Under the pieces are notes generated by a model that searched no databases, was not told where the DNA came from, and saw only the letters and a list, made by a program, of their open reading frames with translations. The position numbers were made by a program, and so were the translations under genes. A stretch of 64,000 nt of DNA, taken from NCBI RefSeq assembly GCF_023055435.1, contig NW_025963913.1, positions 4,836,001 through 4,900,000 on the forward strand. The letters run 5' to 3'. Within the stretch, counting starts at the first letter, position 1. Each line of letters begins with the position of its first letter. Of this stretch, positions 2,137 through 58,141 are shown one piece after another. The stretch is from Haliotis rufescens. Its lineage: Eukaryota.

Positions 2137-10692
<8,556 letters not shown>

Positions 10693-29284: not shown

Positions 29285-29360
29285 ATACAACTTCTTTATT
29301 AAAATGACTGCAACGTGTCGGTGTAGATACTAACACCGTTATTAAGGGCGTTATTAAGCA
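29285..29360 (-). ncRNA. Degenerate minimal hammerhead motif (U3-A8 subtype) in a Penelope-like terminus
   Basis: Minus strand: TTAATAA-C-GGTGT-TAGTATCT-ACACC-GACACGTT-GCA, then AATAAAGAAGTTG; two core substitutions and a local duplication, so probably inactive. Confidence 0.5.
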
Positions 29361-29385
29361 GTTTTAAGTGGTAAGATCCAAAATA

Positions 29386-30867
29386 TACTGAACAACTAAA
29401 GTTCCTGTAACACCAATATTTTAGTGTATTTTTCAAACAAGTAAAGTTTGCTCTTCAATATTGTAGTACATATATGGAATCAAGTCACAAAAACGCAACT
29501 GCTACAGAAAAGCATGCATTCCATGCAAAAGTTGACTCTTATACAAGCCCCATGCATTTCACCACCCAAGAATGGGTATAAAAACATGCGCGTTAACGGG
29601 ATTCCATATGCATTATTAGCATCGTGCTGACAACAACCACTCAGAAAAACAACAAAATTATACAATTATTCAACATTATACGAAATGCCACGCCTGTCCG
29701 AAAACGAGCGTCTGCGAGCCATTGGTATGCTTGAAGCAGGATCGAGTCAACGTGATGTTGCAAGACAATTTAACGTCCATTGAAACACCATTTGGTGTTT
29801 ATGGCAACGTTGGCAACAGACGAATGCAGTCAGAGACCATTCTCGGAGTGGCAGGCCACGCGTAACCAATAATCGACAAGACAACTGGATTCGAACAACA
29901 CACCTACGAAATCGATTCCAGCCAGCAACAGTGACTGCAAGAAGCATCCCTGGCCTTCGACGAATATCTTCACAAACCGTACGTCGTCGCCTCAGATGTG
30001 CAGGGATTGTCGCGAAAAGACCCGCCAGACGTCCCATTTTGACAGGAAACCACCGTCAAGCAGGTCTACAGTGGTGCAGACAGCGTTTACGCTGGACAGC
30101 CATGCAGTGGGGACAAGTTCTATTCACTGACGAGTCTCGTTTTCACCTCAGCCACAGTGATGGACGGATTCGAGTGTACCGACGTCGAGGTGAACGTTAC
30201 GTCAATCATTGTGTCATGGAAGAAGATCGGCTCGGGGGCGGCAGCGTTATGGTATGGGTGGGATTACAGCAAGACAGAGGACCTGTTTGATAGTGGTAGA
30301 GGGAAATCTCAATGGACAGCGCTACCGCGACGAGATCATTGGCCCTGTTGTTCTACCGTTTTTGCGTCGTCATGGCCCAGGCATTACCTTTCAACATGAC
30401 AACGCCCGGCCTCATATTGTTCGACTTGTTCAGGATTCTCTTCAACAAAACATCCCCTGGCCGGCTCGCTCCCCTGATCTCACACCAGTCGAGCACATGT
30501 GGGATGAGATGGAACGGCGCCTTCGACGTCTACCACTTGTTCCACGGACACTCCAGGAACTTCGAAACATGCTCCAGCAGATATGGACAGATATCCCACA
30601 GGACTTTGTGCGACGCCTGGTCCATTCCATGAGACGAAAATGTGTTGCTTGCATCGCGACCAGAGGTGGACACACACGCTATTGATTTGTAAATTGACAT
30701 TTTGGCATGTTCATGTTTTTTTTAATGAAATCACGTCAGTATGGCAAATTAAACCATTTGAACAGGGGTCTTTTATCTGTTGCAAACCGTAATTGTTTCC
30801 TATTTGGTAAAAACTTAACTTTGCATTAAATCTTATTCAATGTCACAGGAACTTTTGTTGTTCAGTA
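29386..30867 (+). mobile_element. Tc1/mariner DNA transposon, full length but decayed
   Basis: TIRs TACTGAACAACTAAAGTTCCTGTAACA / TGTCACAGGAACTTTTGTTGTTCAGTA, flanked by TA. Confidence 0.95.
29685..30685 (+). pseudogene. Tc1-type transposase pseudogene
   Basis: MPRLSENERLRAIGML HTH start; VLFTDESRF, FQHDNARPH and PWPARSPDLTPVEH motifs, ending GGHTRY; in-frame TGA at ~29781, frameshift near 30260, D-E spacing 30 instead of 34. Confidence 0.92.
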
Positions 30868-31256
30868 TATGAAAAATCCCCTCTCGGTCAATGTTACTGC
30901 AACATCCGGACCCTGAAGCCATACAGAACCGAGCTACATTGAGGTGTTTTAGAAATACTTCTTTTTAACTTTTCCAATCCAATCATGTTTTAAGGTCAGG
31001 CGTCTGTGGAGCCCTTAACCTGCCCGTTTAAATGCATGGTTATATTAAGTGTACAGCGGGAGGTGCTTATATGATCACGTTACACTATCTTCGGCAACAC
31101 TTGTTGACCTCTACAGACACGATGAACTAAACCGCACAACTTGCTGTGTATTCACTCTGACATATATATACATACTTTTACATATACCAGTGGATGGCGG
31201 CTGTGTATTATTTATTTGACACTTTAGTCGGTAAGGGGTTCGCCAGTTATGAATAC

Positions 31257-31608
31257 TTGACACAAACCAAGATTCTCCATACCAACATCAATCATTGGAA
31301 AAAGAGGAAACTTCAAGAAAGCATCTAAATCCAAAGAAAGAAGCCAGCCATTAACACAGACCAAGGTATCTTCCTACCCAGTGTGTACTCCACGGTGCTA
31401 TGATCACGTCATCTATATTACATCTTGATTACCTTATTGCTTGTGCCACAATAGCCAGATCCTTGTCACCACTTTAGCGTACTTATTTGAATCTTCTGTC
31501 AATCGCATTGGCTTCGTCATTATATTGTTGTCTTTGGACATTAATCCTTACTCATTGGCTTTGTCATTGTTTTGTTATTTTTGTTCATTCAACCAAACCT
31601 TGTGTTTT

Positions 31609-31655
<47 letters not shown>

Positions 31656-31770
31656 ATGTAAGAGCAAGAAGTAGCTTTGAAACGTCGTGACAAAGAATAA
31701 AAAGAAATTGCTTTCCATATATAGGGTTATGTTTTCATGTTCTCCCAACTTCTAAATGCCTATCAAGGAC
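31257..31770 (+). mobile_element. Penelope-like retroelement 3' fragment: GIY-YIG C-terminal remnant, (CA)n tract, hammerhead-bearing terminus
   Basis: 31257-31403 translates TKILHTNINHWKKRKLQESI*IQRKKPAINTDQGIFLPSVYS; degenerate HHR at ~31650-31689; tail ACTTCTAAATGCCTATCAAGGAC. Confidence 0.75.
31609..31653. repeat. (CA)n microsatellite
   Basis: ~22 CA units. Confidence 0.95.
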
Positions 31771-32059
31771 TCCACCTATTATGTTGACATTTGTGACACA
31801 TAAGACAACTTTGGTTTCTACGACGCCGTCCTTATCCATTACCTCCACATGTTTGTGGCTTGGTTCGATAGTGCTTCACGCCATCCTCTTGTGTGCAATG
31901 AACACCGCAATGTAGTGATTCCGATGCAGAATACGCCTACAACATACATCTTACCTGATACATTCAGTCCTTGTAGCGTAGGCCTGTACATAGTGAGACA
32001 GCGTCCAGATGGGTGGGTGACCAGGGAGGATATGTGACGCTAATTCTTATTAACATATT

Positions 32060-32177
32060 GGGCGGATAGAGCGATCGCTCGTCACGCCGAAGACCCGGGT
32101 TCGATTCCCGAGATGCTTACAATGTGTGATATTGCTGGAATATTGCTAAAAGCAGCGTAAAACCATACTCACTCACT
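32060..32177 (+). mobile_element. SINE family C, internally deleted
   Basis: CGCTCGTCACGCCGAAGACCCGGGTTCGATTCCC head and GCTGGAATATTGCTAAAAGCAGCGTAAAACCATACTCACTCAC tail. Confidence 0.8.
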
Positions 32178-32283
32178 CTTATAGACACGTATTGTACCTG
32201 GCGATCTCTGACCACGCTATTGTTCACTTGAGCCAGGCTCGATTTCCTTGTCGAACGCAAAAAGTATAATATAAGTCCTAAGC

Positions 32284-32612
32284 GTGCAGAAATAAAGGCT
32301 GGGTCTGGGTAGGGTCCACTGTGAATAAATAAAAACTGGGTCTAGTAAGGGTCTACTGTGAGGGAATACAGGTCGGGTCTAGTAAGGGTCTACTGTGAAG
32401 GAATGCAGGTCGGGTCTAGTAAGGGTCTACTGTGAGGGAATACAGGTCGGGTCTAGTAAGGGTCTACTGTGAAGGAATACAGGTCGGGTCTAGTAAGGGT
32501 CTACTGTGAGGGAATACAGGTCGGGTCAAGTAAGGGTCTACTGTGAAGGAATACAGGTCGGGTCTAGTAAGGGTCTACTGTGCAGAAATAAAGGCCGGGT
32601 CTAGGAAGGGTG
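32284..32612. repeat. 37-bp minisatellite, ~9 copies
   Basis: Unit GGGTCTAGTAAGGGTCTACTGTGA(G/A)GGAATACAGGTC. Confidence 0.95.
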
Positions 32613-33426
32613 CATCTTCCCCAGGCAAGAGAGTTAACTATCTTTTATAGCCCAGTACGTGTATTAGATAGCATGAAGCCCGTATCTCTTGTCTAATATA
32701 ATTTGATTTAACAGGATGTAGTTATGATATTTATTTTAAGACGTTATCTCAATCCCCTACACGCCTACCAGACGACAGTGTCTAGAAAGGAACCCCACCA
32801 GCTCATAGTGACCTCTGTGAAATCGGATGGAACAGGAAAACAACGCTTGTTCTTTGGACTACATAGTTCGTGTGTGACGTGGGCACAGTCTGTATACAGG
32901 CAGTAAGCACGTCAGATGCAAGGCATGCACAGTTCACAGGTTATGCGTATTGTGTTAGGTGCAACTGGCGCCGGTTGATGTCACAGATGCAGACAAACTG
33001 ACATGACACATGTTCATCAGGTCATCCTCCTCTGGAGACCCGATTAAAGCAATGACAATATATGCATTTTACTATCAAACAACCCTATGTCTAAATATTG
33101 AAACATGGTGTTTATACTAATTGGTTGCTTTATCAGAACTTTAGACTCCAGTCACCACATTGTAACTTTATTCCTTCAAAGATGTATGTTGAACCCTTGA
33201 ACAGACTTTCACCTTCTCATAACCAGGAACCATTGCATGACGTTTAAGTTCGGTCCAGCATGTTTATCAAACACCTTACCTTTTAACATCGGATTATCAG
33301 GTGTATAGAATCGACATTCTATTTTGTGATGAATTGAATGGCAAACTATAACACAGTATAATCGAGGATGGCTTTGTAGGCATTGGGACAAGTTAACAGG
33401 TAACGTTTATAAATACAGCAACAGTG

Positions 33427-35755
33427 AGAGCAGCTCACACACTCCTGACCTCAAGGTTTTCTCCTACTCAATGCAGGGAGCAGCTCAAACACTCCTGACC
33501 TCAGGGTTTTCTCCTACTCAATGCAGGGAGCAGCTCAAACACTCCTGACCTCAAGGTGTCCTCCTACTCAAAGCAGGGAGCAGCTCAAACACTCCTGACC
33601 TCAAGGTTTTCTCCTACTCGATGCAGGGAGCAGCTCACACACTCCTGACCTAAAGGTTTTCTCCTACTCGATGCAGGGAGCAGCTCAAACACTCCTGACC
33701 TCAAGGTGTCCTCCTACACAAAGCAGGGAGCAGCTCAAACACTCCTGACCTCAAGGTGTCCTCCTACTCAATGCAGGGAGCAGCTCAAACACTCCTGACC
33801 TCAAGGTGTCCTTCTACTCAATGCAGGGAGCAGCTCAAACCCTCCTGACCTCAAGGTGTCCTCCTACTCAAAGCAGGGAGCAGCTCAAACACTCCTGACC
33901 TCAAGGTTTTCTCCTACTCGATGCAGGGAGCAGCTCAAACACTCCTGACCTCAAGGTTTTCTCCTACTCGATGCAGGGAGCAGCTCAAACACTCCTGACC
34001 TCAAGGAGTGCTCCTACTCAAAGCAGGGAGCAGCTCAAACATTCCTGACCTCAAGGTGTCCTACTCAAAGCAGGGAGCAGCTCAAACACTCCTGACCTCA
34101 AGGAGTGCCCCTACTCAAAGCAGGTAGCAGCTCAAACACTCCTGACCTCAAGGTTTTCTCCTACTCGATGCAGGGAGCAGCTGAAACGCTCCTGACCTCA
34201 AGGAGTCCTACTCAATGCAGGGAGCAGCTGAAACTCTCCTGACCTCAAGGTGTCCTCCTACTCAATGCAGGGAGAAGCTCAAACACTCCTGACCTTAAGG
34301 TTTTCTCCTACTCAATGCTGGGAGCAGCTCAAACACTCCTGACCTTAAGGTTTTCTCCTACTCAATGCAGGGAGCAGCTCAAACACTCCTGACCTCAAGG
34401 TGTCCTCCTACTCAATGCAGGGAGCAGCTCAAACACTCCTGACCTTAAGGTTTTCTCCTACTCAATGCAGGGAGCAGCTCAAACACTCCTGACCTCAACG
34501 TGTCCTCCTACACAAAGCAGGGAGCAGCTCAAACACTCCTGACCTCGTGTCCTCCTACTCAATGCAGGGAGCAGCTCAAACACTCCTGACCTCAAGGTGT
34601 CCTCCTACACAAAGCAGGGAGCAGCTCAAACACTCCTGACCTCAAGGTGTCCTCCTACTCAATGCAGGGAGCAGCTCAAACACTCCTGACCTCAAGGTTT
34701 TCTCCTACTCAATGCAGGGAGCAGCTCAAACACTCCTGACCTCAAGGTGTCCTCCTACACAAAGCAGGGAGCAGCTCAAACACTCCTGACCTCAAGGTGT
34801 CCTCCTACTCAATGCAGGGAGCAGCTCAAACACTCCTGACCTCAAGGTGTCCTCCTACACAAAGCAGAGAGCAGCTCAAACACTCCTGACCTCAAGGTGT
34901 CCTCCTACTCAATGCAGGGAGCAGCTCAAACACTCCTGACCTCAAGGTGTCCTCCTACACAAAGCAGGGAGCAGCTCAAACACTCCTGACCTCAAGGTGT
35001 CCTCCTACTCAAAGCAGGTAGCAGCTCAAACACTTCTGACCTCAAGGTGTCCTCCTACTCAATGCAGGGAGCAGCTCAAGCACTCCTGACCTCAAGGTTT
35101 TCTCCTACTCAATGCAGGGAGCAGCTCAAACACTCCTGACCTTAAGGTTTTCTCCTACTCAATGCAGGGAGCAGCTCAAACACTCCTGACCTCAAGGTGT
35201 CCTCCTACACAAAGCAGGGAGCAGCTCAAACACTCCTGACCTCAAGGTGTCCTCCTACTCAATGCAGGGAGCAGCTGAAACGCTCCTGACCTCAAGGTGT
35301 CCTCCTACACAAAGCAGGGAGCAGCTCAAACACTCCAGACCTCAAGGTGTCCTCCTACTCAATGCAGGGAGCAGCTCAAACACTCGTGACCTCAAAGTTT
35401 TCTCCTACTCAATGCAGGGAGCAGCTCAAACACTCCTGACCTTAAGGTTTTCTCCTACTCAATGCAGGGAGCAGCTCAAACACTCCTGACCTCAAGGTGT
35501 CCTCCTACACAAAGCAGGGAGCAGCTCAAACACTCCTGACCTCAAGGTGTCCTCCTACTCAATGCAGGGAGCAGCTGAAACGCTCCTGACCTCAAGGTTT
35601 TCTCCTACTCAATGCAGGGAGCAGCTCAAGCACTCCTGACCTCAAGGTTTTCTCCTACTCAATGCAGGGAGCAGCTCAAGCACTCCTGACCTCAAGGTTT
35701 TCTCCTACTCAATGCAGGGAGCAGCTCAAACTCTCCTGACCTCAAGGTTTTGTCC
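33427..35755. repeat. 50-bp tandem satellite, ~46 copies (2.3 kb)
   Basis: Unit GGGAGCAGCTCAAACACTCCTGACCTCAAGGT(TTT/GTC)CTCCTAC(T/A)CAA(T/A)GCA; period read from line offsets. Confidence 0.97.
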
Positions 35756-37976: not shown

Positions 37977-40900
37977 TCAAGCCTTCTTAGGTATGATAGT
38001 TACAGGAATAGAAGTGTGGTTTAAGACAAACTGGCTGACACTACCCAAGAAAGCTCTTTGAAATGCCCCAAGACCTCTTGTTCCCATGACAATATGCGTA
38101 ATATCCTCTTCCTTGCATGTTTTCACAATCACCTCTCCAGGTTTGCCTCCAGTTGGTCTCAAAGTCTTGCCACTTATCTGAAATTATTTAAATGAAAATT
38201 GATCATACATTGTATATAGTATATAGTATATAGTACATAAAGAGCAAGAAACAAGCCCCTCACAGACTAGAATTCAGAATGTGTTATCAGCAAAATTAGG
38301 ACCATTCCACAAAATGAGCGCTATGACTGGGGGGAAAAGGTGGTTTTAAGAACAGCAGAAGACTGGGAAATATGAATGATTACCACAGTCTATGTTAGAC
38401 TAGATCATCCTAGTCTAGTAGTGAGTGAGTATTGTTGTACATCGCTTTTAGGAATATTCCAGCAATATTACGGCAGGGAACACCAGAAATGGGCTTCCCA
38501 CATTGTACCCATGTCGGGAATCGAACCCAGGTCTTCGGTGTGACGAGCGAACGCTTTAACCACTAGGCTACCCTATCATCCCTCCTAGTCTAGTAACACT
38601 GCAGTATCATACATAATAAGATACATAAAAATATGTTAGGAGACATATCCCATCATGACAGAGGATGAAATGAAATCCAACCAAAACATATTCAGTGGAT
38701 TTGGCTTGTGAACTATTGTTGTATACACTGGCAGAAAGTACTATTTTACACTTAATTTTCAAACAACTTACATTTCAGCTTGATATGAAAACGCTTAATT
38801 TTGTATTGATCTACTGATACAATACCTGTATTGTGACACAGTATTGCAATTCAATGTTCAGTGAATCGAATGTGCTCATGTGAAAAATGTTTGGTGCTCA
38901 TTCTGATCAGTGTGACCAGCGAGTTATAACTTACTCCCTTCTCTCTCAACACTTGTGTGTAAGTGGCTGTCAAGGAACCAATCTCGTCATCACGTCTTTT
39001 CATTTCTTGACACAACTTCTCAACATCCGATGAACCAACTACAACACAGTGAATAACACAACACTTCATTTTTTTAATTACAATTGGAGGAAGGCTGATT
39101 TTGATTGTCAAAAGCTGTCCTAGTACCAATACAAACTACAACAGAAAATATTTTCTGGACGATAGTTAAGATTACAAAAATATTACCTATTATTAAAATT
39201 TATAATTAATTCAATACATAAATAAAATATGAAGACTTACTCATATTCAAGAGATAATAAATTGGTTTGATGCACAAACAAACATACTGGTATGCTGTGT
39301 GAACAATGCTAATGAACGCATCATGTGTGACGTCACAGATCCATGACTCGAGATGCACCATTTGTCTCGTGCAGGATTAGCGTGTAAAGTTTTGAAATCA
39401 TGTGCAGCATATCGTCAAAAGAATAAAGACAATCTGTGGTTATACTGGACTGATTGTTAGTTTTGTCATTAAGTGGTACACACTGGAAACATCTCTTCTC
39501 AACATACATACTTCTCTATGCTTCTTTGTTCAGCGTTTCTTTTGGCAGTGAGTATACATGCATAATACCGAGGTTATGACAACGCAGTTCCTACTGTCTC
39601 TGACTTAGGAGTGTTTTAATCATTTTCTTTATTTGTTTATAAGTTGGTGGGAAGATGAAAGACTTGTGACACTAGTCTGTCCATTGTGAACCTACCTGCC
39701 GGAATGCTGATGTTATACTCAGCCACATGGATAACCACCACGGTGTCCCCCGGCTTGTACAGGCTATCTATAGCATCTGAAACAGGCAGGTCACACCTCA
39801 ACAAGGAGCTAGGTGGGCAATACCACGATTCTAGTGTATAATGAGCACTCAAGCATTATGTGCAACCCCTATTTCAGGACACTACTGAGAAAATGTCTTA
39901 CTGGTACATGATGCTGAGTAATGTAAATTGGCTATAAAAGATGACTAGAAATTACTATTTCAATGATATTTCCTGTAATACAAGACATTTTTAATACACA
40001 GAAACCAACATTATTGTGTGCAACTGTCTCTTTACATTTTAAACTGAATCATTTAATTGAATATATGTATACACATTTGTGGTGGGACAATACACGGATG
40101 CATTGCAATTTTTAACTTCTTGATACAAGTATCAATCACAGTCGCATACTGAGTAAAAAATATCCTTTCTTAAATAGTAGTGAGACCCAATCACTAAATA
40201 GTAGTGAAAATTAGTAGTCAAACGTAAAGATTTTCATCTTGTGTGCCATACTTGATACTACCAGCTGTAAATCGTCAGTAAGCCAGTTATTTGGCCATAC
40301 TGTCTATGAAAAAGGTGGTGTACGCACCATAAATCAGAGGTGAGGTGAGGTGAAATGGGGTTTAACGTCGCGTCCAAGATTATTGCACTTATATAGCGAC
40401 GTGCATGTACTTGTTTGTGTGTGTGTGTGGCTGCTTGTACTAGTCCGGACTGATGCCGATTTAGAGTGCTAGCTCACTGAGATACCATGCCGCAGTTTAA
40501 CATGAATACCCCAATCAGACACAGTATACTGACTCCGAGCCGACCAGTCCTTGCTTTAGCCCCTTAATGCCGAGCGCCAGACAGGGTAACAACAAGTACC
40601 ATCTTTAAACGTCTTTTGGTATGACGCGGCCGGGGGTCGAACCCCGGACCTTCCGCTCTCCGGGCGGACACTCTACCACTAGACCACAGAGGCGGTCACC
40701 ATAAATCAGAGCACATGCAAGTAACATGATATGTATCGGATCGTGTGAAAGGTATCGAGATACATATAGGATCGCACAGTCAGAGTATCGTCCCAGCCCT
40801 ATACACATGGTATAAGACCATTTGACCTTTGTCATCATGGTCATTACCGTTTACGTTTGTTAAATTACTACACAAAATGTGGATTCTGGATAAAAAAAAT

Positions 40901-43900
40901 ATTGCTTAGAATAAACTATCATTATCCGCGAATGACTTCTTTCTATGTCATGATTGTATTATGATACATATCATATAATTACTATCATGGTCTATTTCTG
41001 GCTTCCAAGCATCACATCAACCAGTCATGATTAGACATTTTGCTTGGATTACTCCAAAATAGGGTTGAACTGAGCCCAAATTCTACATATCCTGACATAC
41101 CATTCATGACACATCAAGATACACTGTTTGGCAAAAACAGAATTGATATCTTCCAATTTAAACAGAAAGGGAACTCAGCAGGCTTGCTTCCAAATAATTA
41201 TAGATCTGCAAATGAGGCTGAATATGCATCTTGTTATTATATTGATATAGATTATTTTTTATTTGCACTGTAGGCCATCTGCCCATTGTATTTAGATAGT
41301 CAAGTCCATGGACATTAACGAGCTTCTGATATTCATGACATGGAATATATATACTGAGAGGTTTTTCATGGTTTCAACATGGCATCATGACAACAATATG
41401 TTAAATTTATGTAATGTAGGATGGACATAATATTTTCACGGAATATATTTGTTTCTAAGAAAGTTATCATATTATATAAGACTCAAAAGGAAATACCACA
41501 TAAGGACACCCCTTAAAACTTCTACAAGCCCCCAGGATGCCTTTAACATTAAACAAGCTAACTTATCCCTACCATTAATACTACATCTGTGTTCCAATCT
41601 GATGTCGCTATCAAGTTGCTCTGGCATGCAAACAACACTGTGATCATAAAATAAATTGCCCAATAATCCTAACATTTTTAGAAACAAATGATATTTAGGC
41701 TGTTCTACTTTTACTCAGCTGGCCATGCGGTGTTGACATTGGTGAAGGTGACAGAGGATAACACTGAGTTATGAACATGACATATGAGTCTTTGTGACAC
41801 ATTACAATGATTTATCAAGGAAGAGAATTTATGGCTGTCAACTTCTTGACAACAATTTCAACTGATGAAGGAGTAAGTTTAAACTCCGAAACATTGTGTT
41901 CCCCAAAACAAAGAAATCGATATCCATAAATTCTCTTCCTTCTGTGTATCACTTCTAAATGCCTTTCAAAGACTTAATGATTAATCATATGCATGTATTC
42001 TGACACAGCGAGGACATTTCTTCACCAACACTCACCCAGATTATCAAGAAGCAAAGAATGTTAAGTGGGAGTTATTATAGCCGTGTCAGAAACAGCTCAG
42101 CCCTTCAGCTTTTACTGCATGGTAACACTAAACAGCGGTAGCATTTCTGTTAGAAAGCTGCTTTCAGCATGTTCAGAATGTTTTTTTCTTTAATTTATTT
42201 TGGTTTATTGCCTTCTTTTAAGATAACCCATTTCTTGTTTTATGTATAATTAGTTGGTCTAGATTTATTATCCAACCCTAAGTTTAAAGTACTGAATTTT
42301 AAAAATATTTTTTTGTAGCTGGCTGCATCTTGGCATACTGGTTCCGAAAATATGAAAAGAAAGAATGTTGCTCAAAAGTATTACTGCCTAGTCCTACCTA
42401 CTTAATTAATGAGCATCTCCCAACGGTGAGCAGAGTAAGATACTCCAACTTGTTAGGTGATACAGATGAACCAGATTATGATTGTGTTTGTAAGTTGTGT
42501 TTGATTTGTGCCCAGTTGCTTGTGTTCTATAAACGAATCTTTGGAGAAGTTTTTTCATTGATATAGAACATGGTACTCAGTGTATGTAATAAGATTGTTT
42601 GACCTTTAAAAGAATATATTTTGCATTCCTATCAAGTGACTTAAATGCTAGAAAGAATAAGATTACATTAAAAAGATTAACTTATCCATAACATGGACAG
42701 AACGGAACAGAAGTTGATTCAAAACAAAAACTTTGGCAACAAGCCACTCGTCTTACAATTTACAGATACATGGCAGAGGGAGTATTATCTTCACTTGGGT
42801 TTTGCCAGTAATATTCAGTAATATATTTAACTATATAATTGTTAAACTTTGGACATATCAATAAGAAATTATACTCATCCTTGATAACATCAATGTTGGA
42901 TTGTTTCCAAAATTCGCACCATCTACAATCTCAATATCATGTAAACACTTTAACACCCCAAACTATACACCTTTTAACACATTGTTGAAGTGAACAAAAT
43001 ACATTATTGACAACATGTCTTTGGCGTAAAATTACTCCACTTCATATTTGAATACAAAAACATTCATGGCCTTTAGAACTTTACCCGCTAACACATTATG
43101 GCCTTCAGAAAAGTAACAAATTCACCTACCACTTCTAGCTCTTTACCATTTACAAACCACTTTTCCCTATTATGTAAGAAACCTCTTTTACAAAAAAAAC
43201 CATCCTTTGCGTATAATCCCACATGTAGTACATGTATGCTCGTGTGAAACAGTCTCCCACATCAGCACCCAACCTCTTCAGATTTGTGGAACTGGTATAA
43301 GGGATTGTGAAGTCAGAAGGTGCTAAGCTGACCCAGTTAGACTTTAGTGCTGCTCCCCCAAATTAGAACAGTGTACAGAGAGTGAGTGAGTGAGTGAGTT
43401 GGGTTTAACGCCGCTGTTAACAGTATTCCAGTTATATCACGGCGTGTCAGCTTAATGTGGGAGGAAAGCCCGAAGTGATGCAGGTCTCAGACGTTTACCA
43501 CTTCGGTGAAACCCACGAGCACGGGTACGGTGCTAACAAACCTAGAAACATAATTGGGGCGAACCGGGATTCGAACCCACAATCATAGGTTTCTGGCGTG
43601 CCCAAGGGACGCAACTCTGCATAGCGAATCGCGGCGCCTTAGACGACTGGGCCACTCGTGCCCCCGTGTACAGAGAGTCGGAGGGAGTCTGCTGCATCTG
43701 ACGGAGCAGACGGGCAGAAGACTTCTTGAATTTTTGGACAATGGACATTTGCGAAAGCTAGGTTGAGCAATAATATTTAGTTCCCTGTCATTTGTGAAGG
43801 GATGTTCACTTTACACAAAGGTAAACAGGTAACAATTACCAGTGCACTCAACCTTACCCAATCCCAGTTTAAACAATTTGGAGGTGACCCTGACATCTAC

Positions 43901-46929: not shown

Positions 46930-47690
46930 TGAAGAGAAGTTATGGATGTCAACTTCTTTATATGAAGAACACAACGTTTCGGAGTATATGCTTATTCCTT
47001 CATCTGGTGAATAAATGCTATGAGGCAGCGAACATATATATGTACCTGTAAGAACAACAATCAGTCAACAGTTATTTGGCACTGATAGGTGATCAGCAAT
47101 GGACAAATGGAAGCCAACACTTAACAGTAAATTAGCGCTGCATGATGGTTGCTAGCGATGGTCAGCTGGAAGCCAGGACTTAAATTATCACTGATTGGAC
47201 ACTGGGCAAACGGGAGGCTGGAGGTAATTAGCACTGATGGGTAATAGAACGGAAGTAGCAATGGACAGATTAGCACCCACAATGATCAAAGCAATAAAAC
47301 CCTTACACGGGGCAGATAGGTTCCTGTGTGTCGTACAAAACAACCTTAGCGCTACGACTGTCGTAAATCTATGTTTAGGTATGGGACTTACGATCACCTT
47401 AGCGCTAAGATCGCTTTGTACAACGACACACAGGTCACGATTCAAGGCTGATAGGACTTTTGTCTCCTGAATTCAATGGTTTCTTGTAGTTTTCTTTGTC
47501 GCCATGCAGCTTTTAATGGTAGACATGACTTTTGTGGCTTCCAACATGATGTTATGGTCTTGGTTCTTGAGGAAGTGTTTGGAAATAGTGGATTTCAGGT
47601 CTCGTTTGTTAACAGTGGTCTGGTGTTCTTTGAATCTGGTGTTGATGTGTCTAAGGGTTTCTCCCATGTATTTGTGTATCAACGTATTCA
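46930..47690 (-). mobile_element. Penelope-like retroelement 3' fragment (GIY-YIG endonuclease remnant and hammerhead terminus)
   Basis: YMGETLRHINTRFKEH..SKH, continuing after a frameshift as WRQRKLQETIE..LNRD; HHR motif at 46970-47009 followed by AAAGAAGTTGACATCCATAA. Confidence 0.85.
47322..47434. mobile_element. Palindromic MITE family 2 nested in the Penelope-like fragment
   Basis: CCTGTGTGTCGTACAAA...CTTAGCGCTA / CTTAGCGCTAAG...TTTGTACAACGACACACAGG inverted repeat. Confidence 0.8.
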
Positions 47691-47774
47691 GGCAGGACAT
47701 TCATAATAAATATGGGTTTTGAAAATATATATTTGTGTAAAACTACTAGTTCCTATTTGGTAACAGAAGAGGTT

Positions 47775-49934: not shown

Positions 49935-50200
49935 GAGTGAGTGAGTGAGTTGGGTTTAACGCCGCTTTTAACAGTATTCCAGTTATATCATGGCGTGTCA
50001 GCTTAATGTGGGAGGAAAGCCCGAAGTGATGCAGGTCTCAGACGTTTACCACTTCGGTGAAACCCACGAGCACGGGTATGATGCTGACAAACCTAGAAAC
50101 ATAATTGGGGCGAACCGGGATTCGAACCCACAGTCATAGGTTTCTGGCGTGCCCAAGTGACGCAACTTTGCACTTAGACGACTGGGCCACCCGTGCCCCC
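49935..50200 (-). mobile_element. tRNA-derived SINE family A
   Basis: Near-identical to 43384-43665. Confidence 0.92.
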
Positions 50201-51186
50201 TTGTCTTATGACATATTCTTTAGACTATTTGATGTAAAGATTAAGCCTCTTTTATTATACGGTGCAGAGCAGATATTTGGGGGCACCATTACATTTGATC
50301 CACTTGAGAAAATTCAGAATTATGCATGTAAAAGATTTCTTGGTTTACCGTCACAAACTCCAAATGCTATGGCTGTGGGAGATTGTGGTAGATATCCGTT
50401 ATATGTTGATTCATTTGTGCAATGTATAAAATATTGTCTCAGATTAATACACATGTCAGATGATAGAATACCAAAAAAGTCGTGTAATATGTTAAAACAC
50501 TTAGATGAATGTGATAGGAGAAATTGGGTAACAAATGTTAGAGAATCTTTATGTTTGATAGGTCTTGGAGAAGTCTGGTTCTCTCAAGGTGTTGGTAATT
50601 TTCATTATTTAATAAGTATGATTAAACTTAGATTAAGAGATATTTTTTTTCAAGAGTGGCAAGCAAAATTAAGAGAATGTACAAGATTCGATAGTTACAG
50701 TAAATACAAATTTTCATTAAATGCTGAACCATATGTGTATTGCCAAACATATTTAATGCATAGAAGATACTTAGCTCTTAAATGTTGGAAGATGGAAATA
50801 TGTTGAAAAAAAGTAAAAGAATCTGTCAGAATTGTAATTTAAATGAGTTAGAGGATGAATTCCACATAATAATGTAAGGACCATGTTTAAATGATTTGAG
50901 AAATCTTTTTGTACCAAAGAAATATTTAAGGAAATGTACATCCAAATGTTTTGTTAATTTAATGAATGATTATGATCCAGCTATAGTAGAAAACTTGCTA
51001 AAATTCTTTAAAGCTTCACATGTGAGGAGAGCATGTTATCATTAATTACTGTACACTCTGTTATCATTGAATATATAAGTATGATAAACCGCCATCACCT
51101 TGATGTATAATTTGTATTTTAGTATACTTTGTATACTTTGTATATGGGCCTGAGGCCTCAAGTACAAATAAAAGATTGATTGATAG
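50201..51186 (+). mobile_element. Non-LTR retrotransposon (LINE) 3' fragment, decayed ORF2 C-terminus
   Basis: FFRLFDVKIKPLLLYGAE..LEKIQNYACKRFLG..GDCGRYPL..RIPK..NWV, then a zinc-knuckle remnant CQNCNLNELEDEFH; 3' GGCCTGAGGCC stem, AATAAA and (GATT)n tail. Confidence 0.88.
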
Positions 51187-53124: not shown

Positions 53125-53225
53125 ATTATCCCCCGCCCCAACGAAGTTGGCGGGGGATATAGAAATGGGTTCCGTCCGTGTGTGCGGGTGTGCGTGTGCG
53201 TGTGCGTGTGCGTGTGTGCGTCCCG
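53125..53225 (+). mobile_element. Helentron/DINE-like element end
   Basis: TATCCCCCGCC...GGCGGGGGATA hairpin followed by (GTGTGC)n microsatellite. Confidence 0.5.
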
Positions 53226-53878
53226 AAATCTTTCATGTAAAAGATGCGACGAGTCACAATATTTTTCTCACTTCCCCACTTTCTATCTCTTCTAATCTGA
53301 CAGGAGTGGTTCTGTATCAAATATTTCTTTCATTATTTCTTCAATTTTTTTTCTTCAGTGCCTCTTTGAGGCGTCGGTTGAACCGGCGTTTATTCTTTGA
53401 TTCACAGTAGTTTTAACACAAAGCAGGGGTCTCTGCGTACCAGCCAAGATAAAACAAACGAGAGTGATCTCCCCTAGTAATATCACCTGTGGACGTCAGC
53501 CAGGGACCAACGACTAAACAATCTTTATTTGTTGTCTGTTTTTTTCTGCTTTTGAATGAAAGACAAATATTTTTCCCGTGATGATAATCGCCGATTCAAT
53601 GATTTACTTTCTTATAAGTGCTGAATCGTTTTTTGCTGTGGCAAAAAATAATTGTGAACTTTGTTTAAAAGCCAGATGTTTAGAAGAATATTCCTCCTCT
53701 ACACACTACATTGCCAAACTCTAGTTATATTTCAACGAAAAGACGGATAAGGGGAAATTACGTTGTGAGTAAGGAAGATTCCATCAAGGGTTATAACAGA
53801 TATCTCTTTATTGTGATCAATCGTGTCATCCCGGTTAAAGGGAGGTTACGGAAAAGAGCGAGAGGCGCCGATTCGTTG

Positions 53879-54560
53879 ATGGATCCCCATGGAGACCGTT
53901 GCTACTTCCGTTATTCACAAACGACGCCATTTTGGTTGTTGCTCCTGCACTTTGTTTCCACGTCTGTGTTTGCATTTTGCTCTTTATCCCGCACTTATCG
54001 CACGTTCTTCACGATGTATGCCACTGTTGCTTTGGTTTATCATCAAGGTATCTAGCAGTGCTCTCAGTTTTACATTATATTTGCTTTTCATCTTGATTTC
54101 AAAGCTTTCAGATCGATACCTTTTGACGGATTGTAATTCCCAACTTGAATCCGCCCTAAACATTTGGTAACAAAGTGAAAGAGAATGACGCACAGACTCA
54201 TTAGCAGATGGGACATTTCATGTACTTCATCGGCCCCTCGTATATTGATGTACTTTAGGGATTTCTTTTGTTTTACAACTGATCAGATATTTGTATTTTC
54301 CGAAGTGAATCTGTAGGGTTGTGAATGCATATTTCCCACTTATATTTTTATACATAGTCTGACGCTTTCGACCTCCCACCCTACACCAGATTTTGGTGAA
54401 TGGGACCCCCAATTACGTAGAGAGGCTGTGAGAATATTTCGTTACTATATACGATATCCTGTCTGAATCAAAACAGTGTGCCTGCTGAACGCTGGGAGGT
54501 CAAAAGCATGAGACTGTATATTTGTACTAGTATTTGTTTTTATTCCTCTATGGGAAAGAA

Positions 54561-54618
<58 letters not shown>

Positions 54619-56104
54619 TGACATGAAAGACATAAAAGTACAGTAAATGGACATTTTTGGACATGAAAGAATACAGTAAATGGACATTTTTGGACATGAA
54701 AGACACAGTAAATGGACATTTTGGGACATGAAATACATATAGGGTAAACGGAAATTTTGGGACCTGAACGACATAATACAGTAAATAGACATTTATGGAC
54801 ATGTCATATCCAGTATGTGTCTTTCAAGTCCCCAAACGTCTAAAGACGTGATAAATGATCAAATTGACAGTAAATGCAGAGCCATGTTTCTAGGCACTTT
54901 GCCTCCCATGAGCTCACCTGGGTATAGGATCTACTCAATATGACAGGAGTTTCTGAGAATTGTACCATCCTTAATAAAGTATTCATAGGAGTTGTCTAGG
55001 TTTTCATACACCATCTTCTAACTAAGTGTAGTGTCAAGGGGTGGAAACATAGTCTTTGTACCTTTGGACATGAAAGACATATACAGTAAATGGATATTTT
55101 GTGACATGAAAGACGTATACTGTAAATGGGCACTTTGGGACATGAAAGGTATATAAGGTAAATAGACATTTGGGGATATGAAAGACAAATATACAGTAAA
55201 TAGACATTTTGGGACATGCAATATGCAGGATAGGTCTTTTAAGTCCCCAAACGTCTAAAGACCATTTTACCACAAAATTCCTGGCATATAAGCTTGGAAT
55301 GTTGTGATAACTTGATTAGGCTTCTCAAAAACACAAAGTTACTGGACTAGTTTATAGTCAAAACAATAAGGATCGATATGGTTTTGTATTTTATTTTTAT
55401 TTATACCATTATAGCTCAGGACGACCTCTACAGGTTTCGGAACTACCAGGCCCCCGTCTCCCAAAAGACTCTTCCTGTCCCTGATCCTGTAGGTCATCGT
55501 TAGGTTCAAGTTGTTTGAATTTGGCCTTTTAGTAAGAAAAAAACAACAACCCGAGAAACAGTGCAACTGGCAATATTTGAAACTAGTCATCTGTGTTAAA
55601 ACAATATTAAGACAAATATCACATGATATTTAATTAAGCTTCTTATAATTAGTACTCATTGGTAACTCACAACACAAGGAAGGTGACTTGCATTATTCTG
55701 TCACTCATTACATAATCAAAGTTGTTATTCCTGTTCTGAATATATGACCTTTTCAAGAACAAGTGGTATTGCCACTTTTTGAGTGAGAATTAGAAACAAA
55801 TGGTACAAAATGGTCGACTTTCTCACGTTATTTATACACGATTATACTATCGATTAATACTGATTGCAATGATTTAGAAACTCGATTTCCTTTCTGTAAG
55901 CGCTCCAGTGTCTTCACGATCACCGTCAACCCCCTCTCGTCCCAGCCCGACACCCAGACCTCCCTCCCCGTCCCTGCCCCCAGAGCCCGCCCTCAAGTTG
56001 TAGAGATAGATCTTGGTGAAGAATCCAAGCAGCCCCAGTCGTGCTCGGCCGTCCTTGTGTCCTGTGTGAAATACATGTTCCAGAGTTTCTTCACGGAGAG
56101 ATAG
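53879..56104 (+). CDS. Uncharacterised 3-exon protein, copy 1 (148 aa; 103 aa if started at ATG 54014)
   Basis: Exons 53879-54047, 55415-55488, 55901-56104 with GT-AG sites and matching phases; frame and stop preserved in the paralogue. Confidence 0.7.
54564..54615. repeat. (CA)n microsatellite
   Basis: ~26 CA units. Confidence 0.95.
54620..55220. repeat. Two clusters of a ~33-bp minisatellite (54620-54803, 55065-55220)
   Basis: Unit approximately GGACATGAAAGACATATACAGTAAATGGACATTTT. Confidence 0.85.
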
Positions 56105-58012
56105 ACTTTGGACTTGTTTGCTGTGCCAGTGTTGTGGGAACTACTAGTTTTAGGACCTTTCGGGCGAACCATTTGGACTATTTTAGATTATTTTTGATAA
56201 CATACATTTTGTTTCATACATGCATTAAAATTTACTTAATAATCAGCTTAAAGTATACGTGATAAACGTTTCTGATTGAAGAACGTGTCTTGTATATTAT
56301 ATATTTTCTGCATTCCTTGTTGTGAAGATTGATGACACACGAAATCGAGAGATGTCTTAGCAGGTTATCCATGCCAAACAGTCGCTTCAACCAAGCTATC
56401 GTTATTTTACGAGTTGGTCAAAATGGAGATTTTGAATGCTTGATTTCCCCATATTTTATAAGGATTCATTCACTGTGTCAGCGCAGAAAAATCAAAACAA
56501 ACAAAACTTCGAGGGAGGTCGAGCTCCCGCCCAAAGACTCCACGCCAAGCAGTCGCTGCAGCCAAGCAGTCGTTATTTAAGAGATAATTATAATGAGGAT
56601 CGGATGTTACACTGTCGGAACTCCTAATTAAAATAACTCATGCTTTCCCATGCTGCAATTATCTCTTACATACCTCATGTATAAAGGAAGCTCCAGGTAG
56701 AAATGAGACCGTTGAACTCCCATGCATCATGTCGTTCGGTAAGCAATACTTATGCTGTTAGAATCTGAACAGCTATTATTGGTGGAAGACATCAGTTAAA
56801 AAATTCGATGCAGGATAAAAGCTTAATTAATTTAGTTTTGTAAACTCACCCCACCCCATAACTTACTTACTGGTGAAGATATATCAAAATATGACGATTA
56901 GATAAACTATTTATTGTAAATTCGTGTTAAATTTTGATTAATGTTTGATCGAAAACATACTTTTCTTTATCACCATTGAGTTTTCATCACGCGGTTACAA
57001 TCTGGCAAACCTTGCGTCTTTCTTTTCGACTTGCTCAAGTCGTATCTTGACTCCGTGAAGTAGTTGCTGCAGGGATGACCGCCGTTTCCGCACCTGAAAG
57101 TAGAAAGATTAACGAGAGCAGACCAAGTACATTAAATTTCATTGTTTTAGCAGTTCAGATACATCAATCGTGGGAGGGATACGGACAAGTACCGGATTCT
57201 AGAGCCACGACGTGACAGACAATGCCGAGCGAGGGATGTTTCCAGTACAGTTGACAGCTAGTACCGTGTCCCGCGATCTCGAGACTTTGTACAAATTTTT
57301 CAGTTCAGTGATTAATTAATAAACTCGTTATTGAACTTAAACCTCCTTGTTGTGTGATCCTTCTGAATTTCGCCAGTTTCGACGTTCGCTACTTGTAGAT
57401 CTTTGTGATATATTTTCGCGAAACCTCGTCTCCAAGCTCTGGTATTTATTTTGTCACACTTTTTGACTGGTGGCAACATCCATTTTCGTAGTTTACCCAC
57501 TAGAAAATATGGACCAGTCTAAAAGCTAAACACGCGATATTCCGAACGACGGTCTATCGTCCAGCTGTTGATTCAATGCACGGAGACAATACAAAGAGGT
57601 CTCTATATAGACTGTCTGCTTCAATGAGGAACATTTGAGGGGAACAGCCTTTGCACTGCCCGTGGGAAGTACTACCATACAAATCTATTAGACATTCAAA
57701 TATGTTCAGTTTTTTTAAGTTTGAATCGAGAACTTTGTCAAAATATATTTGAAAGAGTTGTCACTAGTTATGCCGTAAAGCTCGAAAAAGCTGCTTTCTG
57801 AATGGCTAATGTCGACTACTTGTTAGTCATTTCATTGGTCGGTCAAAGTTCGCGAAAGGTCGTTCTATGTCCAGTATCACAGATACCCATGTAAATATAC
57901 CTACAAGTAGCAATGTGGGTTTCAGGCTATCATAGATGTTGCGAACTTGAAAAAGTACATAAGCTTTCATTTGGATTGTCATTCCGAGTTGTAGGATATC
58001 AACTTATTATGA

Positions 58013-58141
58013 AATACTAAGCTTGATAATGGTGTTAGAACCTACACCGAAACGTCGCTCCTAATCGTAATAAGGAAGTTGTTCATCCATATTATATCTT
58101 GTCCTTACTTGGTACTCATACTTCTAAATGCCTCTCAAAGA
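58013..58141 (+). mobile_element. ~129-bp Penelope-like mini-insertion carrying an intact-looking minimal hammerhead
   Basis: Perfect 12-bp TSD AACTTATTATGA (58001-58012, 58142-58153); tail ACTTCTAAATGCCTCTCAAAG shared with the 31750 and 41950 copies. Confidence 0.8.
58020..58059 (+). ncRNA. Minimal type I hammerhead ribozyme motif (U3-A8 variant)
   Basis: AGC-TTGATAA-T-GGTGT-TAGAACCT-ACACC-GAAACGTC-GCT: helix I AGC/GCT, helix II GGTGT/ACACC, palindromic ACGT in place of helix III, predicted GUC cleavage after 58056. Confidence 0.7.

What the first reader, a model, noticed from the sequence alone, without database searches (positions are those of the whole stretch)
29285..58141. Family of covarying minimal hammerhead ribozymes on Penelope-like termini (five copies in 29 kb)
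Seen: motifs at ~29309-29346 (-), 31650-31689 (+), 41859-41898 (+), 46970-47009 (-) and 58020-58059 (+) share one architecture: 3-bp helix I, 7-nt core, 1-nt insert, 5-bp helix II with 8-nt loop, GAAACGT(C/T). Sequence varies while pairing is largely kept: helix I CAC/GTG, AGC/GCT, TGC/GCA; helix II GGAGT/ACTCC, GGTGT/ACACC, AGAGC/GCTTT; core C3-G8 (CTGATGA) versus U3-A8 (TTGATAA). Helix III is reduced to the palindrome ACGT. Downstream lie a GAAGTTG-like motif and, in three copies, the tail ACTTCTAAATGCCT.TCAA. Two copies follow GIY-YIG remnants. Established: Penelope-like elements carry minimal hammerheads thought to act as dimers, and C3-G8 is a tertiary pair that tolerates U-A. Inference: at least three subfamilies have selected for this fold; four copies carry point defects.
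Basis: partly seen in the sequence, partly recalled or inferred. Interest (0 to 1): 0.75.

Follow-up and report, generated by a model that had tools for sequence, protein, structure and literature searches.

The report
Penelope-element minimal hammerhead ribozyme relics

Summary
With at most 2 core mismatches and at least 4 of 5 helix-II pairs, the window holds exactly these five, against 0.7 expected.

They are 3' end units of Penelope-like elements (PLEs):
- c2 and c4 lie about 250 and 410 nt downstream of GIY-YIG remnants.
- c1, c3, c4 and c5 match PLE unit families found across the genome; c2 matches through its tail only.
- In the 1.33-Gb genome the exact motif occurs 8,458 times, against 1,098 for a reversed control. 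It sits 110-446 nt after the GIY-YIG domain of PLE ORFs.

Helix II and the 3-8 pair covary between families. U3-A8 (3,056) and C3-G8 (2,072) far outnumber C3-A8 (212) and U3-G8 (322). Only c5 is intact.

Cervera & de la Peña 2014 already described every one of these features, including U3-A8. This is a correct reading and a new instance of a known kind.

Small-RNA reads gave no sign of cleavage. The scan has flagged this family in the same genome before: 26 notes hold the search words.

Side observation: 35-56-nt tandem arrays made only of hammerheads, 244 adjacent pairs against 4 in the control.

The parts
29273..29346 (-). c1: decayed PLE end unit (hammerhead plus the AAAGAAGTTG stretch, no tail). 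The hammerhead is dead: core TTAATAA and GACACGT.
   Evidence: Read. blastn gives 83.8% over 74 nt to the L067 unit, E 7e-15.
31269..31400 (+). C-terminal GIY-YIG endonuclease remnant of the PLE copy that ends in c2.
   Evidence: tblastn with four PLE ORFs of this genome: 46-53% identity, E 8e-8 to 2e-6.
31610..31653 (+). (CA)22 microsatellite abutting the 5' edge of the c2 hammerhead.
   Evidence: Read. PLE insertion bias for microsatellites is described in PMC8557442 (passages).
31650..31689 (+). c2 hammerhead, family with helix II GGAGC/GCTCT. Dead: core ATGATGT.
   Evidence: The intact family form is seen genome-wide in the rows.
31746..31768 (+). c2 tail (CAACTTCTAAATGCCTATCAAGG).
   Evidence: 22 of 22 nt identical to the L066 unit tail; alignment A3.
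41816..41847 (-). Short inverted partial copy of the same unit, lying head-to-head just upstream of c3.
   Evidence: blastn 90.6% over 32 nt to positions 56-87 of the family-B unit, in reverse orientation.
41857..41973 (+). c3: complete family-B end unit with tail (about 41943-41971). The hammerhead at 41859-41898 has an intact core, but helix III reads ACAT.
   Evidence: blastn 87% over 117 nt to the L032 unit, E 3e-34; read.
46931..47011 (-). c4: family-B end unit without tail. The hammerhead at 47009-46970 has U4>A and one helix-II mismatch.
   Evidence: blastn 91.5% over 82 nt, E 1.4e-27; read.
47419..47670 (-). GIY-YIG endonuclease remnant of the PLE copy that ends in c4.
   Evidence: tblastn with five queries, 34-44% identity, E 5e-10 to 2e-7. 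Pfam did not recognise the fragment on its own.
58013..58141 (+). c5: 129-nt solo end unit of the U3-A8 family. It holds an intact hammerhead (58020-58059), a GAAGTTG stretch (58074-58081) and a tail (58117-58140).
   Evidence: Read. blastn 88.6% over 132 nt to the L066 unit, E 6e-41. 1,794 first-look candidates in the genome.
58001..58012 (.). Left copy of the 12-nt direct repeat AACTTATTATGA flanking c5, read as a target-site duplication.
   Evidence: Read.
58142..58153 (.). Right copy of the same 12-nt direct repeat.
   Evidence: Read.

Best explanation
The five motifs are the minimal type-I hammerhead ribozymes that Penelope-like retrotransposons (PLEs) carry in their terminal repeat unit (pseudo-LTR).

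Shown here:
- Each window copy is the 3' end piece of a PLE insertion that was cut short at its 5' end.
- c2 and c4 still have endonuclease remnants upstream. c1, c3 and c5 are end units of 74 to 129 nt.
- The unit has a fixed order: a few nt, the hammerhead, about 20 nt, AAAGAAGTTG..TCCATA, about 30 nt, then an optional ~30-nt tail starting at (C)ACTTCT.
- The genome holds thousands of such units in about seven families.
- These families keep helix II and the 3-8 core pair through compensatory changes.

Inferred from published work on other PLEs, not shown here:
- In RNA, helix III cannot close in one molecule, because A15.1-U16.1 would enclose only 2 nt.
- Two copies therefore pair through the ACGU palindrome into a double hammerhead, which cuts after GUC or GUU.
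- This trims multimeric or tandem PLE transcripts.
- The tail marks the stretch between the two start sites of PLE reverse transcription.

In this window only c5 could still be active. The other four are dead relics.
For: Motif and chance control.

Genome-wide counts, exact pattern against its reversed control:
- CTGATGA: 2,072 vs 34.
- TTGATAA: 3,056 vs 120.
- YTGAYRA: 8,458 vs 1,098.

PLE link:
- The GIY-YIG query found 1,875 first-look candidates; 150 were scored, all at E of about 2e-21 or lower.
- A hammerhead lies 110-446 nt after the domain in 18 of 30 loci under a strict pattern.
- RVT_1 and GIY-YIG Pfam hits fall in neighbouring ORFs.
- L069 is a partial tandem with a 2,375-nt period. 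L070 and L072 have inverted upstream copies.
- EN remnants lie upstream of c2 and c4.
- c1, c3, c4 and c5 match whole units of the genomic families; c2 matches through its tail only.

Covariation on 64 aligned copies:
- 87.5% of cells are paired, against 77.2% in shuffles (0 of 500 reach it) and 14-53% when partners are slid.
- All 5 helix-II pairs show changes on both sides.
- The 3-8 pair is U-A 43, C-G 16, U-G 2, other 3.
- RNAalifold found helix II on its own.

Literature:
- PMC4209133, read in parts 1-2 of 4, describes the same motif. This includes the unpaired nt after A9, G10.1-C11.1, palindromic 15.2-16.2, U3-A8, thousands per genome and opposite-strand pairs.
- It also reports dimer-only, weak cleavage.
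- The tail and its link to the reverse-transcription start sites: PMC11167929 (passages) and PMC8557442 (passages).
Against: - No Rfam hammerhead model scores, even at E up to 10. That is expected for a motif without helix III, but it is still a failed test.
- Helix I is only 2-3 bp; its outer pair is unpaired in 35 of 64 copies.
- There is no RNA evidence of cutting. Two raw small-RNA runs gave no reads over bins 7922-7972 and a mean depth of at most 1 from there to the unit's end. No ends piled up at the cut site.
- Such libraries would not capture 5'-OH or cyclic-phosphate ends anyway.
- Nearest-neighbour folding does not single out the dimer.
- Published work shows weak in vitro activity. 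It also shows that hammerhead mutants do not impair insertion by an Anolis PLE in vitro. The biological role of cleavage therefore remains unproven.
- The 64-copy alignment was gathered with motif- and family-based queries from related copies. The covariation reflects a few founding events.
Confidence: 0.9

Rival explanations
1. The fold is conserved, but self-cleavage is not its main job. The hammerhead-shaped RNA, or its DNA, would serve as a binding or positioning element for the PLE protein, or as part of the promoter or 5' end of the unit. Catalysis would be residual.
For: - The motif lies at the extreme 5' edge of the unit. 12 of 24 independent top BLAST copies lose homology to long PLE copies within 1-14 nt upstream of the core.
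- Contig depth in two runs jumps at L066 7943-7951.
- Published: in vitro activity is weak. Hammerhead mutants do not change insertion. Cleavage is helped by the PLE protein. No RNA-seq ends fall at the cut site in Anolis.
Against: - The positions kept are those that catalysis needs: G5, A6, G12-A14 and an NUH triplet.
- The 3-8 tertiary pair covaries, which a mere hairpin-binding site would not require.
- Position 7, the one free core position, is the one that varies (TTGACAA family).
Confidence: 0.2
2. c5-type solo units (about 125-129 nt) are a non-autonomous, SINE- or retrozyme-like family in their own right. They would be transcribed from about 9 nt upstream of the core and copied in trans by PLE enzymes, rather than being random 5' truncations of full PLEs.
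For: - 5' ends are discrete.
- The 128-nt query found 1,794 first-look candidates.
- c5 has a 12-nt target duplication.
- Tandem arrays exist whose unit starts at the same boundary (L032, L075).
- A 2026 preprint argues that animal retrozymes derive from PLE pseudo-LTRs (abstract only).
Against: - The BLAST sample favours copies that span the whole query, so the pile-up of 5' ends is partly built in.
- No promoter or transcript start was shown.
- The other 12 of the 24 copies run on into PLE 3'UTR or coding sequence.
Confidence: 0.35
3. The motifs are chance look-alikes of the hammerhead core in AT-rich repeats.
For: The core-only pattern with 2 mismatches is only about twice the shuffle expectation in the window: 17 vs 8.95.
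Against: - With helix II required: five vs 0.675 expected.
- Genome-wide excess is 8-fold for the degenerate pattern and 25- and 61-fold for the two exact cores.
- Four copies are homologous to PLE units, at E down to 6e-41; c2 matches through its tail only.
Confidence: 0.01

Closest known systems
Minimal hammerheads (min-HHR) in the pseudo-LTRs of metazoan Penelope-like elements (Cervera & de la Peña 2014, PMC4209133)
   Same: - Type-I layout, helix III reduced to a palindrome, and one unpaired nt between A9 and helix II.
- G10.1-C11.1 and a short helix I.
- A U3-A8 variant of the C3-G8 pair.
- Thousands of copies in covarying families, mostly as single motifs of truncated PLEs, with some opposite-strand pairs.
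   Different: - Helix II here is 5 bp, against 7-8 bp in the Schistosoma families they describe. Helix I is 2-3 bp, against 4-5 bp.
- U3-A8 families (with U7 or C7) are here the majority.
- Whether this species is in their supplementary lists could not be checked, because supplements are closed.
Poseidon PLE of Anolis carolinensis (PAc; Frangieh et al. 2024, PMC11167929)
   Same: A hammerhead in the pseudo-LTR. An optional 30-40-nt tail that corresponds to the stretch between two reverse-transcription start sites. Tail-less and tailed genomic ends both occur.
   Different: - In PAc the ORF starts inside the hammerhead.
- Here the hammerhead was seen only 110-446 nt downstream of the ORF, and no intact 5' copy was found in the loci I held.
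- Nothing was tested biochemically here.
Metazoan non-LTR retrozymes (Cervera & de la Peña 2020, PMC7229834) and the Schistosoma SINE-like hammerhead elements
   Same: Short non-coding units that carry a type-I hammerhead, sometimes in head-to-tail arrays, probably moved by a retroelement's enzymes.
   Different: - Retrozyme monomers are 150-450 bp, with canonical hammerheads and loop-loop contacts, and are expressed as circRNAs (passages).
- The window copies are dispersed single units with minimal hammerheads.
- The arrays seen elsewhere in this genome have 35-83-nt units.
- No circular RNA was looked for.

Membership tests
PLE minimal type-I hammerhead (min-HHR) | Catalytic core CUGANGA ... 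GAAA with G5, A6, G12, A13 and A14 intact | tested here: met
   Met in c5 and c3 and in most genomic copies (A2). Not met in c1 (G5, A13), c2 (positions 3, 9) and c4 (U4), which are decayed members.
PLE minimal type-I hammerhead (min-HHR) | The 3-8 tertiary pair kept as C-G or U-A | tested here: met
   U-A 43, C-G 16, U-G 2, other 3 of 64. Genome counts: 3,056 and 2,072, against 212 and 322 for the mixed forms.
PLE minimal type-I hammerhead (min-HHR) | Helix II closed by G10.1-C11.1, preceded by one unpaired nt after A9 | tested here: met
   Column 14 is unpaired in all 64 rows. Pair 15-32 is G-C 44, G-U 9. All 5 pairs show double changes, and 91.6% of cells are paired.
PLE minimal type-I hammerhead (min-HHR) | Helix III reduced to a palindrome at 15.1-16.1 (ACGU), followed by an NUH cut site | tested here: met
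   A-U at columns 36-39 in 63 of 64 rows. C37 is over 90% conserved. H17 is C or T in nearly all rows. c3 reads ACAU.
PLE minimal type-I hammerhead (min-HHR) | Helix I formed by the flanks | tested here: inconclusive
   The inner two pairs are kept in 57 of 64 rows each. The third pair is unpaired in 35 of 64. Changes on both sides occur at two of the three pairs.
PLE minimal type-I hammerhead (min-HHR) | Lies in the terminal repeat of an RT + GIY-YIG element | tested here: met
PLE minimal type-I hammerhead (min-HHR) | Self-cleavage, as a dimer | not testable with these tools
   Small-RNA reads showed no ends at the cut site, which says little. It needs a bench assay.
Rfam hammerhead families (type I/II/III, HH9, HH10 models) | Covariance-model score at or above the gathering threshold | tested here: not met
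   No hammerhead match in the window at gathering threshold, nor at E up to 10 in 28000-60000. These models expect a real helix III.
Penelope-like elements with a C-terminal endonuclease (EN+) | Reverse transcriptase followed by a GIY-YIG endonuclease in one reading frame | tested here: met
   - The L066 ORF of 601 aa has RVT_1 at 30.2 bits, and the GIY-YIG match lies at its C-terminal end.
- L067 has RVT_1 (29.4 bits, just under the 29.6 cut-off) plus a weak GIY-YIG hit.
- L068 has GIY-YIG at 28.4 bits, above the 22.6 cut-off.
Penelope-like elements with a C-terminal endonuclease (EN+) | 5' truncation, partial tandems, inverted upstream copies and an optional 30-40-nt tail | tested here: met
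   L069 tandem; L070, L072 and L075 inverted copies; tailed ends (c2, c3, c5, L066, L070) against tail-less ends (c4, L034-, L035-, L069).
Non-LTR retrozymes | Head-to-tail repeats of 150-450 bp with a canonical type-I hammerhead, expressed as circRNA | tested here: not met
   The window copies are dispersed single units. Arrays elsewhere have 35-83-nt units with minimal hammerheads. circRNA was not tested.

The most novel reading that the evidence does not exclude
PLE minimal hammerheads in this genome repeatedly give rise to nano-satellites. These are tandem arrays of 35-56 nt in which each unit is little more than one hammerhead.

- There are 244 adjacent pairs against 4 in the control, at about 30 distinct places in the rows shown, in all families.
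- They often sit at the 5' end of an otherwise ordinary PLE insertion.

The boldest reading has two parts:
- They arise when the PLE reverse transcriptase jumps again and again onto short 5' fragments released by hammerhead cleavage.
- In roughly half of the loci of the U3-A8 families the junction falls directly after H17.

That would make them a genomic footprint of in vivo self-cleavage, and natural templates for double hammerheads or very small circular RNAs.
Probability: 0.12. Interest if true: 0.6.

Novelty: new member of a known kind. Interest (0 to 1): 0.25.

Why it matters
It mainly settles annotation. Thousands of short repeats in this 1.33-Gb genome, many noted separately by the scan, are end units of Penelope-like elements carrying the published minimal hammerhead.

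Modest added value:
- A large natural set of variants, about 8,000 exact-motif copies in about seven families. U3-A8 is the majority state and C7 is tolerated. This could serve as a sequence-function map for the hammerhead core.
- Evidence that the hammerhead sits at the very 5' edge of the transposed unit.
- Hammerhead-only short arrays, which might be the tandem substrates that the dimer model needs.

None of this changes the open question of what cleavage does for PLEs.

Tried and rejected
- Rfam at the gathering threshold and at E up to 10 gave no hammerhead. I do not read this as evidence against the motif, because the models need a real helix III.
- Pfam on window fragments did not recognise the GIY-YIG remnant at 47476-47700. 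tblastn with this genome's own PLE ORFs did.
- The ORFs at 29631-30682 (+) beside c1 are a Tc1/mariner remnant, not PLE.
- Thermodynamic folding of monomers, homodimers and a natural array stretch gave the helix-II hairpin but no clear preference for the double hammerhead. It is uninformative, as expected for a tertiary-structured core.
- Reads: two raw small-RNA runs gave 7 and 366 reads, nearly all antisense and upstream of the hammerhead. Bins 7922-7972 were empty, and no ends piled up at the cut site.
- The two contig runs are only guessed to be RNA and cannot show ends.
- 'Five copies in 29 kb' is not a local hotspot by the strict motif. The window has one exact match in 64 kb, against 6.3 per Mb genome-wide.
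- I considered that short-array junctions mark the cleavage site. The full TTGATAA list (71 pairs against 1 in the control) and the mixed list show junctions directly after H17 in roughly half of the U3-A8 loci.
- Other junctions are 35-nt units without H17 (4 loci) and junctions 2-10 nt further on. The second kind includes all C3-G8 family loci.
- 1-3 nt of microhomology (C, GC, GTC) also makes many junctions ambiguous. Slippage or template switching at microhomology explains them as well, so I kept this reading only as a low-odds novel case.
- I wanted an unbiased sample of 30 motif loci with flanks.
- In the listings and passages I read I saw no description of 35-56-nt hammerhead-only arrays. 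This is not proof that none is in print.
- Lünse et al. (dimer cleavage) is not held. I saw only its reference entry and a review's summary.
- Supplementary figures of PMC4209133 that list species and families could not be opened.

Full report
**1. Observation**

I read the five sites. Each shows the same gap-free layout (alignment A2):
- up to 3 nt that can pair with the far flank;
- a 7-nt core;
- one unpaired nt;
- a 5-bp helix II with an 8-nt loop;
- GAAAC(G/A)T, then C or T, then the other helix-I strand.

The state of each copy:
- c5 (58020-58059, +) has core TTGATAA and no defect.
- c3 (41859-41898, +) has a perfect CTGATGA, but reads GAAACAT.
- c4 (47009-46970, -) has CAGATGA and one A.C mismatch in helix II.
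- c2 (31650-31689, +) has ATGATGT.
- c1 (29345-29313, -) has TTAATAA and GACACGT.

The core-only pattern with up to 2 mismatches is weak evidence: 17 matches against 8.95 +/- 3.19 in shuffles. Requiring at least 4 of 5 helix-II pairs leaves exactly these five, against a mean of 0.675 and a maximum of 3 in 40 dinucleotide shuffles. Rfam finds nothing, at gathering threshold or at E up to 10.

**2. What the copies belong to**

The five share more than the hammerhead. A unit of about 120 nt continues through AAAGAAGTTG, TCCATA and, in c2, c3 and c5, the tail ACTTCTAAATGCCT.TCAA.

BLAST of the c5 unit against the window's own genome (1.33 Gb, 615 contigs) gave 1,794 first-look candidates. Forty were scored, at 88-100% identity for full-length matches.

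Many of these copies run on upstream. In L017/L031 the upstream sequence encodes broken reverse-transcriptase and GIY-YIG frames that end about 240 nt before the hammerhead.

A search with that 90-aa GIY-YIG piece gave 1,875 first-look candidates. All 150 scored had E of about 2e-21 or lower. In 18 of the 30 loci cut out, a strict hammerhead pattern lies 110-446 nt after the domain, mostly near +255. The other 12 had none under that pattern (one locus, L065, was scanned in the wrong orientation).

Pfam finds RVT_1 and GIY-YIG in the neighbouring ORFs.

Other loci show the known PLE architectures:
- a partial tandem with a 2,375-nt period (L069);
- inverted upstream copies (L070, L072);
- tailed and tail-less 3' ends.

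In the window, tblastn with five PLE ORF pieces hits only two places. One is 31269-31400 (+), about 250 nt upstream of c2. The other is 47670-47419 (-), about 410 nt upstream of c4.

blastn with unit references places the copies as follows:
- c1 at 29346-29273;
- c3 at 41857-41973, with a 32-nt inverted piece at 41847-41816;
- c4 at 47011-46931, without tail;
- c5 at 58012-58142.

c5 is flanked by a 12-nt direct repeat.

**3. Genome-wide numbers and covariation**

Exact-pattern counts on both strands, against the same pattern read backwards:

| Core | Matches | Control |
|---|---|---|
| CTGATGA (C3-G8) | 2,072 | 34 |
| TTGATAA (U3-A8) | 3,056 | 120 |
| CTGATAA (C3-A8) | 212 | 57 |
| TTGATGA (U3-G8) | 322 | 157 |
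| YTGAYRA | 8,458 | 1,098 |

The last row implies about 2,800 copies with C at position 7. In the rows shown these are almost all TTGACAA. Position 7 is the one core position known to be free, so its variation fits a hammerhead.

Families differ in helix II: GGAGT/ACTCC, GGAGC/GCTCT, GGTGT/ACACC, GGTAT/ATACC, GGTAC/GTACC and a GGC/GCC type.

For a formal count I collected every instance in the held loci and the window that fitted a relaxed pattern: 111 instances, 82 distinct 45-mers. I dropped 2 evident chance hits (in L057 and L064) and 18 rows from the L075 array. I added c1 and c2, which had failed the pattern. That gave 64 rows.

On these rows:
- 87.5% of cells pair, against 77.2% in shuffles (0 of 500 reach it) and 14-53% with slid partners.
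- All 5 helix-II pairs have changes on both sides.
- The 3-8 pair is U-A 43, C-G 16, U-G 2, other 3.
- Helix I is weak; its outer pair is unpaired in 35 of 64.

Caveats: the rows were gathered by motif- and family-based queries and are related by descent, so the signal stands for a handful of founding events. RNAalifold on seven whole units found helix II on its own. It also found a 6-bp stem AGAAGT/ACTTCT that brackets the stretch before the tail. That stem never covaries.

**4. Mechanism**

A15.1-U16.1 would enclose only two nucleotides, so helix III cannot form within one molecule. This follows from the sequence. Two copies can pair ACGU with ACGU.

That such minimal hammerheads cut only as dimers or tandems, and weakly, is published for other PLEs (PMC4209133, parts 1-2 read; a review's summary).

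The tail matches the published optional 30-40-nt PLE extension, which lies between two reverse-transcription start sites (PMC11167929 passages; PMC8557442 passages).

I have no evidence of cleavage here. In two raw small-RNA runs of the same species label, 7 and 366 reads were laid on L066:7650-8150. Nearly all were antisense, 29-30 nt long, at 7869-7907. Bins 7922-7972 were empty, and mean depth from there to the unit's end was at most 1.

Those libraries would not capture hammerhead products in any case. Folding energies were uninformative.

**5. Position of the hammerhead in the unit**

Among 24 independent top BLAST copies, 12 lose homology to long PLE copies within 1-14 nt upstream of the core, and 12 run further. 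The sample favours copies that span the query.

Contig depth in two runs rises about ten-fold from L066 7943-7951 and falls after 8073. In the L032 array, four 83-nt units join a tail-less 3' end to a point 6 nt upstream of the next core. Only the last unit has the tail.

So the hammerhead lies at the very 5' edge of the transposed unit. This is compatible with a transcript start there, but that was not shown.

**6. Comparison and novelty**

Cervera & de la Peña 2014 report all of the following:
- minimal hammerheads in both flanking repeats of PLEs;
- thousands per metazoan genome, in consensus families full of compensatory changes;
- G10.1-C11.1 and palindromic 15.2-16.2;
- mostly single motifs from truncated PLEs, with opposite-strand pairs;
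- a U3-A8 core covariation with about 1,300 hits in Schistosoma mansoni.

Its features differ only in degree: helix II is 5 bp, helix I is 2-3 bp, and U3-A8 is the majority state. The scan holds 26 notes with these words, and all eight shown are in this same genome. Two of the notes concern c5 and its duplicated copies just beyond the window.

**7. Side observation**

A pattern asking for two hammerheads 1-16 nt apart gives 244 adjacent pairs against 4 in the control. For TTGATAA alone it is 71 against 1.

The arrays have units of 35-56 nt, lie at about 30 distinct places in the rows shown, and occur in all families.

L075 is a PLE-type insertion with three parts: an inverted partial copy, 23 units of 43 nt, and a last unit that runs on into the normal tail-less 3' end.

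In roughly half of the U3-A8 loci the unit ends directly after H17. Other loci have 35-nt units without H17, or junctions 2-10 nt further on, and microhomology blurs many of them.

I saw no description of such arrays in the listings and passages I read. I report them as noticed, with a low-odds bold reading.

**Verdict.** It is a new member of a known kind, of low to moderate interest.

Noticed in passing
Own genome, e.g. L075:338-1370, L033:480-1100, L032:637-1000; further places listed: Tandem arrays whose 35-83-nt unit is essentially one minimal hammerhead. There are 244 adjacent pairs against 4 in the control, in all families. They often lie at the 5' end of a PLE-type insertion, and junctions are often, but not always, directly after the predicted cut site.
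   Followed up: partly
L066:5747-7654 (+) and L068:719-2893 (-): In two different PLE families, a long RT + RNase H ORF (636 and 725 aa) of another retroelement follows the PLE GIY-YIG ORF. In L066 it lies between that ORF and the hammerhead. It may be an element that targets PLE 3' regions or their microsatellites.
   Followed up: no
L066:7869-7907 (-): Antisense small RNAs of 29-30 nt, piRNA-sized, pile up in the PLE 3'UTR 45-80 nt upstream of the hammerhead. One raw small-RNA run gave 366 reads and a second gave 7.
   Followed up: no
L066:7913-7934, L069 upstream of each hammerhead, window 31610-31653: Microsatellites sit just upstream of the hammerhead unit: (AAGT)n ends 17 nt before the core in L066 and L069, and (CA)22 abuts c2. 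This fits the published microsatellite bias of PLEs.
   Followed up: partly
window 29631-30682 (+): Tc1/mariner transposase remnant in two frames (HTH_Tnp_Tc3_2 and DDE_3 hits), next to c1.
   Followed up: partly
window 33278-35600 and 32247-32653; also 54632-55230: Satellite arrays with periods of 50 nt (46 or more copies), 37 nt (8 copies) and about 36 nt.
   Followed up: no
window 28172-28409, 43384-43621, 49935-50172; inverted partial copies at 32064-32178 and 38420-38561: A dispersed repeat of about 240 nt (78-97% identity). Nearby tRNA-like matches just below Rfam's threshold, at 40622-40693 and 38513-38571, suggest a tRNA-derived SINE.
   Followed up: no
G000:C135 4894013, 4900539, 4907414, 4914158 and C146 1942798, 1949511, 1962648: The c5 insertion with its flanks is repeated every 6.7 kb or so, four times on this contig and three times on another. 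It therefore predates a segmental or tandem duplication. The C146 copies carry changes in the first helix-II pair.
   Followed up: partly
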